From: Octopus bimaculoides
Lineage: Eukaryota
Assembly: GCF_001194135.2 (NCBI RefSeq)
Contig: NC_068988.1
Location: forward strand, 71,744,640 to 71,779,210
Direction: 5' to 3'
DNA: 34,571 nt
Shown here piece after piece: positions 610 through 27,650 of this stretch. Made by a program: the position numbers and the translations under genes. Under the pieces are notes generated by a model, which ran no database searches, was not told the origin of the DNA, and saw only the letters and a list, made by a program, of their open reading frames with translations. Each line of letters begins with the position of its first letter. Positions within the stretch are counted from its first letter, which is position 1.

Positions 610-3060
610 CTGCTATTTTTCGGGCACCTTCCAGAGTATTCGATAGGTTCCAAGCAGTGCTGTTTTCTGCAAGTGCTCCACCCTTATTGCAGCCCCTATT
701 TGTTCTACGTACTTCTTGAAATTTTTGCTCACTGTTCCCAGGGCTCCGACAACTATTGGTACTACTGCTACCTTTTTCCTCGACCACAGCTGCTTAACTT
801 CCCAAGCTAACCTGTCATATCTCTCGACTTTTCTTTCTTCCTTATCGCATACCTTGTTGTCGGCTGGGCATACTATATCTATGATCCAGCATAGTTTGCT
901 TCCTATTCTCTATCTCATGGTCGCACTGAATCATAAAATCCCATAGGATCTTTGCATACCAATAGTCGTACCAATTGTTTGCTCTGTCAAGTCCATACTT
1001 GTTGCAAAGTGTCCTATGGACAAGCCTGGTTATATTGTCGTGGCGTCTCTTATATTCCTTCTGAGGTAGTGGCGTACATTGGCTGGTAATATGCCATACG
1101 GTTTCACTGTTCTGTCCACAGATTCTGCACTTATCACTTTCTGCTTTGTTGTCTATTCTGTATTTTATGTAATTTGTTCTTAGGCAGCACAAATTAGAGC
1201 CTCCGTTTCCGGTTTTAAATCACTTTTAGTCAAACACAGTTATCTCTTTTCTCTGTCTGTCTTATCTTCAACATCCCTATGAAATTGGCCATGCATTCTT
1301 TTCTTTACCCACCTATTTTCAGTTTCATTCGTTTTCAATTTCTTGTATAGTGCGTTATCTTTGCAATCTTTCACCCTACACAAGCCTGACCTTCTCACTT
1401 CTAATAATAGCGGTTCTGTGGCATTTTTTACATATCATGCTAGTTGTTTCTTCTGCTCTAATGTTGCGTTCGCATCCAATAAGTCCTCTTCCCCTTCTTT
1501 TTCTTGGCACATACAGTCTGTCTATGTCACTTTTTGGATGGAGTGACCCATATCTAGTTAGCAACTTCCTTGTCTTTCTGTCTAAGCAGTTTAGTTCGAA
1601 TACTGTCCATGCGATTACCCCTGCTCCATATCTAAGGAGTGAAACCAGCCAGGTGTTGATAGCTTCGATCTTATTCCGTCCGTTTAATTTCGACTTAAGG
1701 ATCAGTCTGAGTCTGCGAGGTATTCCGCCTTAAATTTTTCTCTCATTTCTTTCTCCATCAATTTATTCATTTCCAAAATCCCCAAGTACTTATAGCTCGT
1801 CTCTTCTATCTGCTTCATAACCTACCCTGACGGTATCGTTAGCCCGTCCATACATTTGATTTTGCCTCTCTTAAAGACTAATACACCACACTTTTGCAGC
1901 CCGAACTCCATTCTGATATCAGCATTGACGGTATACACCGTATCAGCGAGGGAACTGACTTGGGTTTCATCTTTACCATAAAGTTTGAGGTTATCCATGA
2001 ATAAAAAATGGTTGACTCTTTGTTGGCGGCTTTTGAATACATACCCAGCTTTTGCTTTCCTCATAATCAGTGTTAGTGGTATCAAGCACAGTACAAAGAT
2101 CAGTGGGGACAGGCAGTCCCCTTGGAAGATGCCCTTCCTCATTTCTACTGTCCCTAAACTTCTTCGGTATGCTGTCAAGTCCGTCCTCCAATTCGCCATA
2201 CTTTTTGCAAGCAATCGCTCAACATTCGACACAATACCAAATAGGTTCATACACTCCATAATCCAAGAATGTGGGACTATATCGTACGCCTTACGATAGT
2301 CGATCCATGACATGGCTAAGTTACTTTACCTCTTCTTGCAGTCTCTAAGTACGGTTTTATCTATCAGGAGTTGATCCTTGGTACTTCTGCACTTACGCTT
2401 GCAACCCTTATGCTCATGTGGCAGGACTCCATTTTTTCAAGATGTTCTGCGAGTATTCCAGTTAATATCTTCTACATAAGTGGTATACAGGATATCGGCC
2501 TGTAATCGTCTACCGTATTGCCTTTTTCGATGTTTTTCCTACCCAATGTCAACCACTCTGGTGTTACTTGGTCAGCATTTAACAAGGTGTTGAGCTGCGC
2601 AGCTATTCGTGCATGACATTTACCAAATCTTTTGATCCAGTAACCTTGAACTCCATCTGGTCACGGGGCCTTCCAGTTGTTCATTCTTCTGCTGATTTCC
2701 TTTACTTTCCTAACTGAAATGACTAGTTCCTCTTGTTTTGGACAGACTACTGCTTGTTTCAGTTCTTGCAATCATTCAGCATCATTCTTGTGCTCTTTGT
2801 CTTTGCTCCAGATGTCACTCCAAAAACTTTGACTTTCAATGTTATCTGATATTAACTTTTCATCTGTACACTCTCCATTTATTTCTTTATAGAATCTCTT
2901 CTGATCTACTCTGAATAACCTATTCTGGTGGTAACCCTTCATTCTTTGGTTGTACCTTACCATCTTTGCTTTCTTTGCAACGAGGCGCTCTTTCAGTTCT
3001 TCCATTACTACTTTCAGGCCCTTTCTTACAATATTATACTTCCTTATCAGCGCCCTGTGC
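610..3060 (-). mobile_element. Dong/R4-clade non-LTR retrotransposon, 5'-truncated and degenerate (copy A: RT, CCHC finger, restriction-like endonuclease end)
   Basis: Minus-strand fragments read in order: EELKERLVAKKAK..RLFRVDQKRFY; WLTLGR..DYRPISC; WIDYRKAYDIVPH..GIFQGDCLSPLIF..HFLFMDNLKLY (RT); HPKSDIDRLYVPRKRRGRGL; CRICGQNSETVWHITSQC (CCHC); KILWDF; LQKTALLG. Many stops and frameshifts. Confidence 0.9.
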
Positions 3061-7538: not shown

Positions 7539-9045
7539 CCATGGGACGCTGAGGGAATAACTTCAAGATTGCCTTAATGGAGGAATAATACAAGTTTGAC
7601 TGACTAGAGGGAGGAAAATACTCATCATGAAAGATAAGAGCAAAGGTGACACAGCTAGCAACTATAGACCAATCACTTGCTTACTATTAGTGAGGAAGCT
7701 GTTAACTAGAATGCTTTCAGAAAGCATTTTCGAGCACCTTGACAACCAGAATTTACTGCCAGAAGAACAGAAATGTTGCAGGATGAAGGCTAGAAGACAA
7801 AACAGTTCCAAATGAAATAAAAGCTAAAAAGAAAAATCTAAAAATATCATGAATGGATTTTAGAGAAGTTTATGACATGATCCAACATTCGTGGATAAGT
7901 GAATGTCTGAGTATATTCAGCATAAAAGACAACATAAGAGAATTAATTAGATGCAGAAAGAAAAACTGAAAAGTACAACTCTACTCAGGTAACATACTCT
8001 TTGGGAAAGTTAACATCAAAAGACGATTTTTACCGGGGGTCTCGTTGTCGCCTTTAACATTTGTCTTATGTTTGATCCCCCTCGGTTTAGTGTTAAGGAA
8101 GGCAAAGGCAGAGTATCAGTTCAGAAATAGTAAAGGGAAAAATTAACAATTTGCTCTACATTGATGATCTGAAGCCTTTTAGTAAGAATGAAAAAGAGAT
8201 AGTTTCCTTCATACAGACTGTAAGACTCTTCTGCAAAGATATAGGCATGGAATATGGCATAGATAAGTGTGCAACATTAGTCATGAGAAAGGGACAGGTT
8301 GTCAAAAGTGAATGGATCCAATTACCAAATGGCCAGACAATAAAATCATTGAAAGGAGGAGAGAGTAATAAGTATCTAAGAGTATTGGAATCTGACAGGT
8401 TACTAACAATAGAAATTTAAACGAAAATTGAGAAAGAATACATCAGAAGGGTGACGAAGCTAATGAAGTCAAAGCTAAATGGTCCGAATCTAGTGAACGT
8501 TCTAATACTTGGGCAGTATTATTACTTAGATACTCAGCAGCTTTTGTAGATTGGACAAAAACTGAATTAGCAAAGCTAGACAGAAGGACTAGAAAGGAAT
8601 TCAATATGAATGGAGAACTCCACCCAAGGGCAAGAGTAGCAAGATTATACCTGCCTAAAAAGGAAGGCGGGTGAGGATTAATATCAACAGAAGACTGCGT
8701 GAAGTTAGCCAGAGTAGATATAGACTCCTATGTAGGTAATAGCGAAGTAAATTTGCTTGAGTCACAGTAAGACATATGAAAACTAAAAATCCAAACGAAG
8801 TTAAAAACCAGACAAAAGAACGGAAATTATCTGACTGGCAGGGGACAGTGTTGCATGATAGTTACAGCAATTAGCTGTAGTGAAACATGGTTATGACTGC
8901 AGAAAGGGAAGCTTGAAGAGGGGGCAGAAAGTTTGTTAGCAGCTTCAAAAGATCAAGCATTAAGGACTAGATGTTTAAACGTCAAGATAGACAAAATCCA
9001 AGTAGATTCCAAATGTAGATTATGCAAATCAAAAGAGGAATAGTT
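7539..9045 (+). mobile_element. Dong/R4-clade non-LTR retrotransposon internal fragment (copy C, RT to CCHC start)
   Basis: MKDKSKGDTASNYRPITCL; LYIDDLKPF..DIGMEYGIDKCATLVMRKG (RT); ARLYLPKKEGG; DQALRT; KCRLCKSKEE. Frameshifted and interrupted by stops. Confidence 0.9.
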
Positions 9046-9347: not shown

Positions 9348-9564
9348 CGCAGTCAGAGAGCGCAAACCTCCGCCAAGGCAACACCAACGTCCTCTCAATG
9401 ATTAGTCAGAAAAGATTTTTAAAATGAGAATATCTGAAATCAACTTGACTACTCTCACAAACGNNNNNNNNNNNNNNNNNNNNNNNNNNNNNNNNNNNNN
9501 NNNNNNNNNNNNNNNNNNNNNNNNNNNNNNNNNNNNNNNNNNNNNNNNNNNNNNNNNNNNNNNA

Positions 9565-9615
9565 GCATTTACGATCGTTTCGATTTACTGGTTTAAGTAA
9601 ATCTCTTCAGAATAC
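9565..9615 (-). ncRNA. Complete minimal type I hammerhead ribozyme motif in the inverted pLTR
   Basis: Minus strand: GTATT (stem I), CTGAAGA, GATTTACT-TAAACC-AGTAAATC (8-bp stem II), GAAAC-GATC-GTA, AATGC (stem I). All core positions are canonical, the stem III region ACGATCGT is palindromic, and predicted cleavage follows GUA, between 9570 and 9569. Confidence 0.85.
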
Positions 9616-10831
9616 GAATAGATAGGTGCATCGGTTAGGATGCGAAAGATGATTTATAGATTATTGATAGATAATTGATAGAATTCACTGAATAATAAAA
9701 AACTTGACAAATTCTACGAAACTAGAAAGATGCTGACCTATAAAAATAATAAACAACCAACTAATAGGACTAAGCCACCCTCTTACGCAACGCCTCCTGC
9801 TAACTTAGGTGCAGACCTGAACAATAATCCCCCCCCACCCACTACAACACGGACGTAAATACACCTAATTATTTATGTGGCTGTAGGGATAGAACAAAGT
9901 ACCATTTCTCAAATAGATGTAAGATTACGTAGACCAATGTGACGTCCGCACAAACAACCAGAAGAAATCATACATAGGTGCAACGAAGAACCAAATGACT
10001 CTCAGATATAACACGCATCTATCCAGCTTCAGAAATAGAAATAAGGCTAACTCAACAGGGCTAAGTGCATACATTTGGGAACTTAAGGACGAAAAAATTG
10101 ATTTTAGCTTAAACTGGCGTATACTCACAAAAACATCGTCCTACCACACCACAAATAGACGCTGCGATCTCTGCCAATCAGAATGCCTAGCTATACTTGC
10201 GGCTAAGCAACCACTTCTCAACAGGAAATTTGAGAATAACAATTATTGTCTTCCCGTGGGCCTTTATGTATTTTCGAAATACCGATAGAATAGCCTCTCT
10301 TGTCTTCATGCAGGCCTCTATGGCTTCATAACCCCAATCTAGAATACTCATCTATATAAGTCGAATTAACTGGGTAACACCTTAAACACACGAAGAGTCA
10401 GCAGCAAACCCACTCGACCCAAACATTTCATAATAATACACTTTGCATATACACAGGACCCCGTCAAGCACTAGGAACCTGCTAAACTCTAGCAATAGCA
10501 CATTTTCAAACCACTCATGAGTTAGCTCCCTTCTAACCCAGTTAGAGTTACACCCCTTCACCTGCACCACCAGTGTAACTAGCTCTAAAATTGAATAAAC
10601 ACGTGCGAATAAAATGTGCTTAATTAAACTTGGAATCACGCACCTCAATAATACTCAACTTACCCTAAGTTCCCAACGAAACTAAACAATCTACCACGAG
10701 CAAAACTCTACCCTGCGAATTTCCCAGCGCAAGAACAAAAATTTAATGTAAAAATTACCAATTTGTTTACATTACCATCAAATGTCTATCAATTATCTTA
10801 GGCATCCTGACGGATGCACCTATCTATATTC

Positions 10832-10866
10832 GCATTCTGAAGAGATTTATTTAAACCAGTAAATGC
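10832..10866 (+). ncRNA. Inactivated hammerhead copy (sense pLTR) lacking GAAAC and stem III
   Basis: GCATT-CTGAAGA-GATTTATTTAAACCAGTAAAT-GC. Relative to 9565-9615, 16 nt (CGAAACGATCGTAAAT) are missing between two GTAAAT direct repeats. Confidence 0.75.
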
Positions 10867-25712: not shown

Positions 25713-26532
25713 TCCTACCAATATATATGTAGCTAACTATAGTGCATGTGTTCTTGTTTCATAACTCGGGTTTAGGTAATTGTCGAATAAATTATTATGC
25801 CGTCTAAATATAACACTGGAGAACATATTTTTGTGAATGATATCTGATACTTGATTCTAAGTATTTTGAGTGCGCTAAATATGAATTTGAACTCGGTTCG
25901 GCTCTATCAGGTCCTGATTTTTGTCAATAGCCTATGTGCCATTTTTCTCAAATTAGGACTTTCTCTCAAATTCTCAAATTAGGATTAAATTTTCTCAAAT
26001 TAGGACTAAAAAATTAAGTCATAGGTTCAAATTTAATTTCAAGGTTCATGAATACAAGCAGTCCAAAATTCTGTAAAATTACATTTTAAAGATAGAAATT
26101 ACTTAAAGAGATATGAAGCTTTCACTCTGGTAAAAAATGTCTCCTATATTTTCTTGTTAATGGCGGATCTCTTTCCAAACGCCAACAGTGAGAATACCAG
26201 TGTCTTTGGTACCATTCCACCATAATCTTTATATCTTGTTCATCACTTACAGCACCTAAATTACTTGGAAATCGGTCAAGATAACAATTCAAACAATGCA
26301 TTTTTATGCTAAGGAGAAAATAGCTAGTTCTAAAATCTATAAACGAGATGTAAGTAGTAACAATACTAAAAGTAACCTCTTTTTTTGCCACTATAACATG
26401 CCTGCTCAATAAAGAACTATGTTACTACACTCTAACCTCAGGAAAACGTCTTTTTTCAGGTTAACGACACAAAATCTGTGTCCGATATATTGTGAGTAAG
26501 GGAGCGAATCACTCCATTCCAGCTTGGCAATA

Positions 26533-26577
26533 CCAGTAGACCATGGTTTCTGGGTCTTTACCCTTCATCGGTACTGG
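26533..26577 (-). ncRNA. Minimal type I hammerhead motif (U4C, A-flanked stem II)
   Basis: Minus strand: CCAGTA, CCGATGA, A-GGGT-AAAG-ACCC-A, GAAAC-CATG-GTC, TACTGG. Perfect 6-bp stem I, palindromic ACCATGGT, GUC cleavage triplet. Confidence 0.72.
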
Positions 26578-26994
26578 ACACCTGCCTGTTAGAGATGGCA
26601 GTCATTCACCCCTACTCACAATATATAAACAGGGAAGCGGCAGAGAGCTGCCGATCTCGTAAGGAGCCAAATAGCTAGTTCTAAAATCTGTAAACTAGCT
26701 TGAGGGGAGTGGTTCGCTCCCTTTCTCACAATATATCGGACACAGATTGCGAGTCGTTAACCGCTGGAAAAATATTTTCCAGGGGTTAAGATGTAGTAAC
26801 ATATTTCTTTATAGAACAGCCATGTTATAGTGGCAAAAAAAACGTTACCGTGTAGTATTGTTACTACTTATATCTCGTTTAGAGATTTTAGAGCTAGCTA
26901 TTTTGCTCCTTATCATATGAACCGCTATCTGTCGCTTCCCTGTTTACATATTGTGAGTAGGGGCGAGTGACTACCATCTCTAGCAGGCAAGTAT

Positions 26995-27038
26995 CCAGTA
27001 CCGATGAAGGGTAAAGACCCAGAACCATGATCTACTGG
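26995..27038 (+). ncRNA. Second, mutated hammerhead copy (GAAAC to GAAC, GUC to AUC)
   Basis: CCAGTA-CCGATGA-AGGGTAAAGACCCA-GAAC-CATG-ATC-TACTGG. Confidence 0.62.
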
Positions 27039-27650
27039 TCTTGCCAAGCTGGGAGGGGAGTGATTCGCTCCCTTACTCACAATATATCGGACACAAGCTG
27101 TGTGCCGTTAACCAGCTGGAAAAGACGCTCCGGCATAGTTCTTTCGAGAACAACAATGCTATAGGAGAAAAAAACCCTTACCATTTTTATGCTCATATTG
27201 CAGCCTAATTCTTTGTAGTCACTTAAAATGTCTTTTACTATTTCTTCGTCGTTATCTGCCCCATAATTGCCTAAATTGTTTTCTATCAAATCTACGAATG
27301 AGAACTAGGCATTTTCTCGCGTTCATTCATAAAATTAAGAAAATCACCGTCTTTAATTAATGTTCTGGTTTGTGGACTGTCGAAATTTCCGCCTTGATTT
27401 TTTTCATAACTTAAACTTGGAAATTTTGAAGTTATTGCCGTTTGTATCTAAAGCTTTTACATATTGTCTAATGAGGCCCAGTTTAATATGCAGAGGAAAT
27501 ATGATTTTATCTCTGGGCACTAAAGGTGGATTTATTACGCTTTTTTCTTCAACAGCCAGTGATGTTTGTACTGGTCACATCTGTTTGAAATAATGTTACT
27601 CCTTGGCTCTGCTGTCCCATAAGCAAAGGAAACAGGGATATTTAGTATAC

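What the first reader, a model, noticed from the sequence alone, without database searches (positions are those of the whole stretch)
26299..27193. Retrozyme-like insertion: back-to-back, greater-than-unit-length copies of a ~350-nt hammerhead-carrying unit
Seen: an 871-bp insert flanked by a perfect 12-bp duplication of transposase coding sequence. The left arm (26310-26700) is ~1.1 units with period 350. The right arm (26702-27181) is ~1.4 units with period 351 in the opposite orientation, starting at a different point in the unit. Each arm carries one type I hammerhead motif with a palindromic stem III, and there is no ORF. Established: minimal type I hammerheads with palindromic stem III occur in PLE pLTRs and in metazoan non-LTR retrozymes (few-hundred-nt tandem units processed to circular RNAs), and PLE insertions often show inversions. 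Inference: the greater-than-unit, permuted arms fit reverse transcription around a circular or multimeric RNA with a strand switch at ~26700. This would point to a possibly uncatalogued ribozyme-based non-autonomous retroelement family.
Basis: partly seen in the sequence, partly recalled or inferred. Interest (0 to 1): 0.8.

Follow-up and report, generated by a model that had tools for sequence, protein, structure and literature searches.

The report
Inverted hammerhead-repeat retroelement insertion
An 871-bp non-coding insert in a decayed animal transposon gene consists of two head-to-head, longer-than-one-unit copies of a 351-nt repeat with a degenerate hammerhead-ribozyme motif, and it looks like an old, dead copy of the already described animal "retrozyme"/Penelope-derived element class.

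Summary
The structural observation holds. An 871-bp insert (26311-27181) is flanked by a perfect 12-bp duplication. Removing it restores a repeat-encoded ORF that aligns gap-free with homologues across the insertion point.

The insert is two arms of a 351-nt unit. The left arm is 1.11 units, antisense. The right arm is 1.37 units, sense. They are joined head-to-head, and their outer ends fall at different unit positions.

The hammerhead claim holds only in part:
- The left copy has all three helices, GAAA, A15.1-U16.1, a C17 cleavage site and a palindromic ACCAUGGU helix III that pairs as a dimer. Its core reads CCGAUGA (U4 to C) and has an A.A mismatch at the base of helix II.
- The right copy has lost one A of GAAA and the palindrome.
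- Each arm has one motif, on opposite strands, so this locus cannot release monomers.

The best reading is a dead insertion of a non-autonomous, hammerhead-bearing retroelement (metazoan non-LTR retrozyme / Penelope-derived). It was probably made by target-primed reverse transcription from both strands of a staggered cut, on a multimeric or circular template. That class and that insertion architecture are already published.

I found no other copy, and the organism is unidentified. Copy number, family consensus and circular RNA are therefore untested.

The parts
26299..26310 (.). Left copy of the 12-bp target-site duplication CATTTTTATGCT (codons S-I-K-M of the host ORF on the minus strand)
   Evidence: (D8)
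26311..26700 (-). Left arm, 390 nt = 1.11 units of the 351-nt repeat; the hammerhead-sense strand is the minus strand. In sense orientation it runs from about unit position 173 at the centre, through a full turn, to unit position 210 at the left TSD.
   Evidence: (D2, I1, I2)
26697..26701 (.). Central head-to-head junction. The sense 5' ends of both arms meet here. The palindromic AGCT (26697-26700) can be assigned to either arm, giving 3-4 nt of microhomology.
   Evidence: assignment of AGCT is inference
26701..27181 (+). Right arm, about 480 nt = 1.37 units; the sense strand is the plus strand. It runs from unit position 1 (26702), through 351, to about 148 at the right TSD. The second partial unit (27053-27181) carries a roughly 14-nt deletion plus smaller indels relative to the first.
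   Evidence: (D1)
27182..27193 (.). Right copy of the 12-bp target-site duplication
   Evidence: (D8)
26533..26577 (-). Hammerhead-like motif of the left arm: CCAGUA / CCGAUGA / A-GGGU-AAAG-ACCC-A / GAAA / CCAUGG / UC|UACUGG. The predicted cleavage site is between 26539 and 26538. It deviates from the consensus at U4 (C) and at 10.1/11.1 (A.A). Helix I continues into a long closing helix (26526-26586 and beyond).
26995..27038 (+). Degenerate hammerhead-like motif of the right arm. It has the same 5' core and helix II, but GAA-CC (one A lost) and CCAUGAUC (palindrome broken), so it fails the descriptor.
26122..26310 (-). Host repeat-encoded ORF remnant, the part downstream of the insertion (SIKMHCLNCYLDRFPSNLGAVSDEQ...FLPE*)
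27182..27540 (-). Host repeat-encoded ORF remnant, the part upstream of the insertion (...FPLHIKLGLIRQYVKALD...ELGCNMSIKM). It is interrupted by several stop codons. The upper limit is approximate.

Best explanation
The insert is an old, inactive copy of a short non-autonomous retroelement. Its 351-nt unit carries a type I hammerhead-derived motif. This is the class described as metazoan non-LTR retrozymes, now argued to derive from Penelope-like element (PLE) pseudo-LTRs.

Proposed mechanism:
1. A staggered cut was made in an AT-rich site inside a decayed transposon ORF, leaving 12-nt 3' overhangs.
2. Each 3' end primed reverse transcription at an internal position of an RNA with a 351-nt period, either a multimeric transcript or a circle. 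The start points were unit position ~148 on one strand and ~210 on the other.
3. Each cDNA ran for more than one unit.
4. The two cDNAs were joined head-to-head at a short AGCT microhomology.
5. Fill-in of the overhangs produced the 12-bp duplication.

What is shown: the insertion, the TSD, the arm geometry, the hammerhead-like motif, its predicted dimer fold, and a significantly stable unit fold.

What is inferred: the RNA intermediate, priming on both strands, the PLE enzyme as the mobiliser, and past ribozyme activity.

Why the locus is dead: it has one motif per strand, the right copy is broken, and the copies are about 14% diverged.
For: - Insertion and TSD.
- Geometry: the sense 3' ends abut the two TSD copies at different unit positions and the sense 5' ends meet in the middle. 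This is what priming on both nicked strands predicts. [quoted passage not shown] 2021, PMC8557442).
- Enzyme behaviour: a purified PLE protein cleaves and extends both strands, prefers AT-rich DNA with ATT, starts reverse transcription internally at two adjacent sites, and is proposed to use multimeric RNA (Frangieh et al. 2024, PMC11167929).
- Target site: the TSD here is 75% AT, and both inferred nicks are followed by CAT with an ATT 1-3 nt downstream.
- Arm ends: there is no poly(A) or simple-repeat tail at either end, and no sequence is shared with the LINE fragments in the window.
- Period: a 351-nt period inside a TSD-bounded insert excludes a merely truncated multi-kb element.
- Motif: the hammerhead-like motif is far above chance, about 4e-4 expected per insert. 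Its homodimer MFE forms helices I and II and an 8-bp trans helix III (-46.4 versus 2 x -19.0 kcal/mol).
- Precedents for the deviations: U4C is a natural viroid variant with reduced in vitro activity, and mismatches at 10.1/11.1 occur in natural and retrozyme hammerheads.
- Motif dimensions: helix I of 6 bp, helix II of 4 bp and a short palindromic helix III equal those of canonical metazoan type I hammerheads.
- Unit fold: as a circle the unit folds with z = -5.2 (left) and -6.5 (right), and helix I extends into a roughly 55-bp closing helix.
- Retrozyme criteria met: GC 42%, no ORF, TSD longer than 4 bp.
- Genome context: a consensus PLE-type minimal hammerhead lies elsewhere in the window (9564-9616), so hammerhead-bearing elements do inhabit this genome.
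Against: - Only one locus is available. There is no second copy in 34.5 kb and none in any collection searched, so multi-copy status and a family consensus are untested.
- The core is non-consensus at two positions that normally matter, and no Rfam hammerhead model matches.
- The 29-nt identity of the motif between the arms is not more than expected from 85.6% overall identity (P = 0.41). There is therefore no evidence of selection on it.
- With two sequences, the structure has no meaningful covariation support.
- The arm ends are 62 nt apart, not the 30-40 nt of the published PLE 'tail'.
- No PLE RT/GIY-YIG ORF was identified in the window.
- Microhomology at the outer junctions is weak: 5 of 7 and a TTTTA offset by 2 nt (my reading).
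Confidence: 0.6

Rival explanations
1. LINE-mediated insertion with twin priming. The 351-nt repeat is a satellite or SINE-like transcript copied in trans by a LINE reverse transcriptase. The second nick primed internally, as in L1 inversions. The hammerhead-like motif is a relic with no role in mobilisation.
For: - A 12-bp TSD is typical of LINE/SINE insertions (established knowledge).
- Head-to-head geometry with 5' ends at the centre and microhomology at the junction is the twin-priming signature.
- LINE RT fragments are present in the window.
Against: - Neither arm end has a poly(A) or microsatellite tail.
- The unit shares no similarity with the LINE remnants in the window.
- There is no tRNA, 5S or 7SL head.
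- Both arms exceed one unit, which needs a multimeric or circular template anyway.
Confidence: 0.15
2. The insert is an extremely 5'-truncated ordinary PLE insertion. The 351-nt unit is just the repeated terminal (pLTR) region of an autonomous Penelope-like element, not an independent non-autonomous family.
For: - The architecture is identical to PLE insertions: partial tandem plus an inverted truncated copy.
- Most PLE insertions are 5'-truncated.
- Dual hammerheads 100-700 bp apart on opposite strands were reported for truncated PLEs.
Against: - A head-to-tail period of 351 nt means the template itself repeated every 351 nt. A multi-kb PLE would give a multi-kb period.
- The motif has canonical type I dimensions (helix I 6 bp, helix II 4 bp), not the PLE min-HHR dimensions (helix II 7-8 bp, helix I 4-5 bp).
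- There is no ORF fragment in the insert.
Confidence: 0.12
3. A DNA-level event: extrachromosomal or satellite DNA was captured at a staggered double-strand break, or a fold-back template switch occurred during repair. This gave an inverted duplication of a pre-existing repeat, and the hammerhead-like motif is incidental.
For: - Fill-in of a staggered break also gives a short duplication.
- Inverted head-to-head joins with 3-4 nt of microhomology are typical of end-joining or template-switch repair (established knowledge; junction).
- Nothing in the window proves an RNA intermediate.
Against: - Both arms are permuted, greater-than-unit copies with their 'sense 3' ends' outward. That is an orientation rule expected from priming on target 3' ends, not from random capture.
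- The unit carries a motif and a fold typical of ribozyme-bearing retroelements.
Confidence: 0.08

Closest known systems
Metazoan non-LTR retrozymes (Cervera & de la Pena 2020, NAR, PMC7229834)
   Same: - A short non-coding repeat in the 150-450 bp range (351 bp) arranged head-to-tail.
- A type I hammerhead-type motif with a 6-bp helix I, a 4-bp helix II and a short palindromic helix III that needs a dimer.
- GC 42% (<50%).
- A TSD longer than 4 bp.
- A strongly self-paired predicted circle.
- No LTR and no ORF.
   Different: - There are only 1.1 and 1.4 units per arm and one motif per strand, so no monomer can be excised from this locus.
- The core has C at position 4 and A.A at 10.1/11.1.
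- The sequence is unrelated to the coral, mussel and axolotl retrozymes printed in that paper's supplement.
- An inverted head-to-head arrangement is not mentioned in that paper.
- Expression and copy number are unknown.
Penelope-like elements: pLTR hammerheads and tandem/inverted insertion structure (Cervera & de la Pena 2014, PMC4209133; Craig et al. 2021, PMC8557442; Frangieh et al. 2024, PMC11167929)
   Same: - The insertion architecture: a partial tandem with an adjacent inverted 5'-truncated copy.
- Hammerheads on opposite strands a few hundred bp apart.
- An AT-rich target.
- cDNA start points internal to the template and different at the two ends.
- An enzyme known to extend both strands.
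   Different: - There is no RT/GIY-YIG ORF.
- The period is 351 nt rather than kilobases.
- Helix dimensions are not those of the PLE min-HHR.
- The end offset is 62 nt rather than a 30-40 nt tail.
L1 twin-priming inversions (established knowledge, not checked in a paper here)
   Same: Two arms in opposite orientation within one TSD-flanked insertion, 5' ends meeting at an internal junction with microhomology, and a TSD of about a dozen bp.
   Different: There is no poly(A). The arms overlap in template coordinates and each exceeds the unit length, so the template is repetitive or circular.
Newt/salamander satellite 2 and axolotl Rtz331/Rtz353 hammerhead repeats
   Same: - A unit of about 330-350 nt.
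- A hammerhead with weak helix III that works as a dimer.
- Rtz353 also has a mismatch (U.U) at the base of helix II and cleaves poorly as a monomer.
   Different: There is no sequence similarity. Those occur as long arrays with consensus CUGAUGA cores. Here there is a single dispersed, inverted insertion with CCGAUGA.

Membership tests
Hammerhead ribozyme, type I | 5' core C3-U4-G5-A6-N7-G8-A9 | tested here: not met
   Both copies read CCGAUGA, with C at position 4. U4C is a known natural variant with reduced in vitro activity (Perreault et al. 2011).
Hammerhead ribozyme, type I | G12-A13-A14 followed by the A15.1-U16.1 pair and H17 at the cleavage site | tested here: met
   Left arm: GAAA-CCAUGG-UC|. 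Right arm: GAA-CCAUGAUC, one A lost, so not met there.
Hammerhead ribozyme, type I | G10.1-C11.1 pair closing helix II | tested here: not met
   A.A flanks the 4-bp GGGU/ACCC helix in both copies. U.U mismatches at this position are documented in natural hammerheads and in axolotl Rtz353. I found no documentation for A.A.
Hammerhead ribozyme, type I | Three helices around the core, with helix I open | tested here: met
   Helix I is 6 bp and extends into a long closing helix. Helix II is 4 bp plus a tetraloop. Helix III forms only in trans, as an 8-bp ACCAUGGU duplex in the homodimer MFE.
Hammerhead ribozyme, type I | Match to curated covariance models | tested here: inconclusive
   No hammerhead family matches at E<=10. 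A fully consensus minimal hammerhead at 9564-9616 is missed as well.
Hammerhead ribozyme, type I | Self-cleavage | not testable with these tools
   This needs in vitro transcription of monomer and dimer constructs.
Metazoan non-LTR retrozyme | Head-to-tail repeats of 150-450 bp, non-coding, without LTR | tested here: met
   Period 351. No ORF exceeds 60 codons and there is no protein homologue. PBS and PPT were not specifically searched.
Metazoan non-LTR retrozyme | A type I hammerhead in every repeat, with at least two in the same orientation so that a monomer is released | tested here: not met
   There is one motif per arm, on opposite strands, and the right one is broken.
Metazoan non-LTR retrozyme | GC below 50% and TSDs longer than 4 bp | tested here: met
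   GC 42%. The TSD is 12 bp.
Metazoan non-LTR retrozyme | Highly self-paired unit RNA | tested here: met
   The circular MFE has z = -5.2 and -6.5 against dinucleotide shuffles, with 64% of bases paired. This is a prediction only.
Metazoan non-LTR retrozyme | Many genomic copies; expression as linear and circular RNA | not testable with these tools
   The source genome and its transcriptome are not available. There is no second copy in the window and no hit in the searchable collections.
Penelope-like element (autonomous) | ORF with a telomerase-like RT and a GIY-YIG endonuclease | tested here: not met
   There is no ORF in the insert. The RT fragments elsewhere in the window look LINE-like (RVT_1, zf-RVT).
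Penelope-like element (insertion signature) | Partial tandem plus an adjacent inverted 5'-truncated copy | tested here: met
   geometry compared with the description in Craig et al. 2021.
Penelope-like element (insertion signature) | A 30-40 bp 'tail' reflecting two adjacent internal RT start sites | tested here: inconclusive
   The two arm ends lie 62 nt apart in unit coordinates, at ~148 and ~210. One locus cannot show whether these sites recur.
LINE-dependent SINE | A Pol III-type head (tRNA/5S/7SL) and a LINE-like 3' tail or poly(A) | tested here: not met
   There is no tRNA, no Rfam match, no A-tail and no similarity to the LINE remnants in the window.

The most novel reading that the evidence does not exclude
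The locus may be a clean footprint of reverse transcription running more than once around a ribozyme-processed circular RNA. Priming would be on both strands of a PLE-type staggered cut. The element would belong to an undescribed retrozyme family whose hammerhead naturally carries C4 and an A.A closing helix II.

If genome-wide copies showed the same outward-3' geometry and recurrent start sites, that would be direct structural evidence for how non-LTR retrozymes are mobilised, and by which enzyme. The 2020 and 2026 papers leave this point open.
Probability: 0.2. Interest if true: 0.55.

Novelty: new member of a known kind. Interest (0 to 1): 0.33.

Why it matters
Non-LTR retrozymes and PLE hammerheads are established. 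How retrozymes are copied back into DNA is still inferred only from co-occurrence and sequence similarity with PLEs.

This is a TSD-bounded insertion whose empty site can be reconstructed. Its two arms point 3'-outward and each exceeds one unit. That is the product expected if a PLE-like enzyme primes on both strands of a repetitive or circular template.

One decayed locus proves little. It does define a simple genome-wide test: collect such insertions, then map their end positions and orientations. That test could settle template form and mobiliser. By itself the locus is a fossil with no evident function.

Tried and rejected
- **Rfam, gathering and E<=10**: no ribozyme family matched. The control on a consensus minimal hammerhead also gave nothing, so the result is uninformative.
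- **Rfam 'Hairpin ribozyme' hit** at 26627-26653(+): 16.5 bits, E = 3, antisense polarity, half of the model deleted, and not conserved in the right arm. Treated as chance.
- **Exact-pattern scans** with conserved 20-22-mers of metagenome contigs (twice), GTDB genomes (twice) and viral contigs. The only hit, a Chitinophagales MAG, shares nothing beyond the 20-mer, and about one such hit is expected by chance.
- **Composite six-frame translation of the unit** against 5.8 billion predicted proteins, hoping to catch spurious ORF calls on other copies: nothing.
- **Exact-ORF look-ups** of two window ORFs: not on record.
- **Organism identification through the LINE RT fragment**: the best relatives are 61-69% identical and sit in unnamed ENA assemblies.
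- **First protein search with the flanking ORF**: no word hits. The exhaustive search then found 52 homologues.
- **Selection on the hammerhead**: the 29-nt identical run is not significant (P = 0.41).
- **Covariation**: only two sequences, with 3 'compensatory' pairs in minor hairpins. This is not evidence.
- **TIR/foldback DNA transposon**: rejected because the two termini are different parts of the unit and not inverted copies of each other.
- **Pol III box B**: GGTTCGCTCCC in one copy resembles it (my reading), but there is no box A spacing or tRNA fold.
Full report
**Setting.** The window is a draft animal-type scaffold. It has five runs of N, many microsatellites, LINE-type reverse-transcriptase fragments and no tRNA or Rfam family at gathering score. 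I could not identify the organism. The closest database relatives of its LINE RT are 61-69% identical and lie in unnamed ENA assemblies.

**The insertion is real.**
- A perfect 12-bp direct repeat, CATTTTTATGCT, sits at 26299-26310 and 27182-27193 (D8). It bounds 871 bp (26311-27181).
- A 12-mer repeat alone would not be remarkable in this AT-rich DNA. Another chance pair lies in the same 1.9 kb (D9).
- This pair, however, lies exactly at the limits of the repeat block.
- Deleting the block plus one copy restores a minus-strand reading frame...ELGCNMSIKM|HCLNCYLDRFPSNLGAVSDEQ....
- An exhaustive HMMER search with the downstream 62 residues found 52 homologues. The restored sequence aligns with one of them gap-free through the junction (NMSLKIHFLHSHLDFFPDNLGAVSDE; E 3e-28).
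- The host ORF belongs to a widespread repeat-encoded family. It has no Pfam domain of its own and turns up fused to mariner, PIF1 or RT domains in evidently chimeric predictions. Calling it a transposase is therefore unproven. This copy is already riddled with stop codons.

**Anatomy of the insert.**
- Both arms show a direct period of 351 nt (D1 and D2) and are inverted relative to each other (I1 and I2, 83-87%).
- I took the strand carrying the hammerhead-like motif as sense and numbered the unit from 26702.
- The right arm (plus strand) runs 1-351 and on to about 148, where it meets the right TSD.
- The left arm (minus strand) starts at about 173 at the centre, runs through a full turn and ends at 210 against the left TSD.
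- The sense 5' ends therefore meet head-to-head near 26697-26701, where a palindromic AGCT can belong to either arm. The sense 3' ends point outward and stop at different unit positions, 62 nt apart.
- Neither end has a poly(A) or simple-repeat tail, and both match the unit to the last base.
- The termini are not inverted copies of each other, so this is not a TIR or foldback transposon.
- No other copy of the unit, and no similarity to the LINE remnants, exists in the window.
- No ORF exceeds 60 codons, and a composite six-frame query found no protein relative.

**The hammerhead claim.**
- On the minus strand of the left arm (26533-26577) the sequence reads CCAGUA-CCGAUGA-A-GGGU-AAAG-ACCC-A-GAAA-CCAUGG-UC|UACUGG.
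- Present: a 6-bp helix I, a 4-bp helix II with a tetraloop, GAAA, the A15.1-U16.1 pair, C17 at the cleavage site, and a helix III that is only the palindrome ACCAUGGU.
- Two copies of the domain fold, at minimum free energy, into the classical double hammerhead with an 8-bp trans helix III (-46.4 kcal/mol against 2 x -19.0).
- These dimensions are the ones given for canonical metazoan type I hammerheads (helix I 6 bp, helix II 4 bp, short palindromic helix III). They are not those of PLE minimal hammerheads (helix II 7-8 bp, helix I 4-5 bp) (PMC4209133).
- Two features depart from the consensus: C instead of U at position 4, and A.A where G10.1-C11.1 is expected.
- U4C is a documented natural viroid variant that lowers activity in vitro. 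U.U mismatches at 10.1/11.1 occur in natural hammerheads and in the weakly active axolotl Rtz353 motif (PMC3088659; PMC7229834).
- A descriptor relaxed to allow both departures is expected 0.013 times per window, about 4e-4 per insert, in dinucleotide shuffles. The resemblance is not chance, although I chose the relaxation after seeing the motif.
- The right-arm copy (26995-27038) shares the 5' core and helix II but reads GAA-CCAUGAUC. One A is lost and the palindrome is broken. It fails the descriptor and does not form helix III.
- Rfam reports no hammerhead even at E<=10. It also misses a fully consensus minimal hammerhead elsewhere in the window, so I give this no weight.
- The 29-nt identity of the motif between the arms is no longer than expected from 85.6% overall identity (P = 0.41). 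Two sequences give no usable covariation.

**Unit fold.** As a circle the 351-nt unit folds with z = -5.2 (left) and -6.5 (right) relative to shuffles, and similarly in antisense. Helix I continues into a closing helix of roughly 55 bp. This is the 'highly self-paired' look of retrozyme circles, but it is a prediction only. GC is 42%.

**What it most likely is.**
- A TSD-bounded, non-coding insert with a 351-nt head-to-tail period must have been copied from a template that repeats every 351 nt: a multimeric transcript or a circle.
- The outward-3', inward-5' geometry is what results when both 3' ends of a staggered cut prime cDNA synthesis on such a template and the two cDNAs are then joined.
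- A purified PLE protein has been shown to cleave and extend both strands, to prefer AT-rich DNA with ATT, to start reverse transcription internally at two adjacent sites, and probably to use multimeric RNA (PMC11167929).
- Here the TSD is 75% AT. The two inferred nicks read ...GCT^CATATTG and ...ATG^CATTGTT.
- Together with the hammerhead-type motif, this places the element in the class of metazoan non-LTR retrozymes (PMC7229834). A 2026 preprint argues these are non-autonomous derivatives of PLE pLTRs.
- I put this reading at about 0.6.

**What the locus cannot tell.**
- Circle versus multimer is open. Repeated segments within an arm are as different (87.5% in the left arm; 71.6% with gaps in the right arm, about 83% over ungapped columns) as the arms are from each other (85.6%).
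- That pattern fits either a homogeneous template followed by long decay or a heterogeneous array transcript. A 12/12 intact TSD has a probability of roughly 0.16 under the former, so it does not decide.
- The locus is dead. It has one motif per strand, one of them broken, so no unit-length RNA can be released from it.

**Rivals.**
- LINE twin priming explains the inversion and the TSD. It does not explain the lack of any tail or of a LINE-related 3' end (0.15).
- A severely truncated ordinary PLE fits the architecture. It does not fit the 351-nt period or the helix dimensions (0.12).
- DNA-level capture or fold-back repair cannot be excluded from one locus. It does not predict the orientation rule or the ribozyme-type unit (0.08).

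**Novelty.**
- The class, its ribozyme type, the need for dimers, the PLE link and the tandem/inverted PLE signature are all published.
- What I did not find in the retrozyme papers read here is an inverted, both-strands-primed retrozyme insertion with a reconstructible empty site. 'Inverted' does not occur in PMC7229834.
- That is a useful anecdote and suggests a genome-wide test. It is one decayed copy in an unidentified genome.
- I rate it a new member of a known kind, with modest interest.

Noticed in passing
window 9564-9616 (minus strand), with inverted partner 10777-10864 (plus strand): A fully consensus minimal type I hammerhead: CUGAAGA, an 8-bp helix II, GAAA, palindromic CGAUCG and UA| with a 5-bp helix I. 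It has PLE min-HHR dimensions and abuts the N-gap 9464-9563. Its homodimer forms an 8-bp trans helix III. An inverted copy about 1.1 kb away on the other strand (82-95% complementary) lacks the 16 nt CGAAACGATCGTAAAT, and so lacks GAAA and helix III. This looks like a PLE-type inverted pLTR pair, partly lost in an assembly gap. Rfam does not detect it even at E<=10.
   Followed up: partly
window 9995-10288 (plus strand): An ORF fragment lies between the two hammerhead-bearing inverted arms (...STGLSAYIWELKDEKIDFSLNWRIL...CDLCQSE...). From memory it resembles the C-terminal part of GIY-YIG-type nuclease domains common in invertebrate repeats. It has no Pfam hit at E<=10, so this is unverified.
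   Followed up: partly
window 842-2313 (minus strand) and 7627-8420 (plus strand): LINE-type reverse-transcriptase remnants (RVT_1, weak zf-RVT). The nearest database relatives are only 61-69% identical and lie in unnamed ENA assemblies, so the source organism could not be named.
   Followed up: partly
window 26303-26310 / 27194-27203 and the complementary strand at 26287-26310: The two nick sites inferred from the 12-bp duplication are both followed by CAT, with an ATT 1-3 nt downstream (GCT^CATATTG on top, ATG^CATTGTT on the bottom). This recalls the ATT preference reported for a purified PLE endonuclease. One site cannot show a preference.
   Followed up: no
window 26627-26653 (plus strand, antisense to the left-arm hammerhead): A weak Rfam 'Hairpin ribozyme' match (16.5 bits, E = 3) with 24 model positions deleted. 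The equivalent stretch of the right arm does not keep the hairpin, so I judged it chance.
   Followed up: partly
window 26708-26724 and 27059-27075; left-arm equivalent 26497-26513: A conserved hairpin GGAGUG-RUU-CGCUCC lies next to the best-conserved stretch of the unit, CTCACAATATATCGGACACA, which is identical in all three copies. In one copy the loop region reads GGTTCGCTCCC, one mismatch from a Pol III box B consensus. There is no box A or tRNA fold.
   Followed up: no
window 27114-27181: The last 68 nt of the right arm are much more diverged from the unit than the rest. There is a roughly 14-nt deletion plus smaller indels, and the right-arm overlap as a whole (27053-27181) is 71.6% identical with gaps counted. 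This could mean the template was a heterogeneous multimer rather than one circle, or it could be later decay.
   Followed up: partly
locus L003 3515-3534 (Chitinophagales MAG contig JAAFHQ010000388.1): An exact 20-mer match to the hammerhead core region with no homology outside it. About one such match is expected by chance in 596 Gb searched on both strands.
   Followed up: yes
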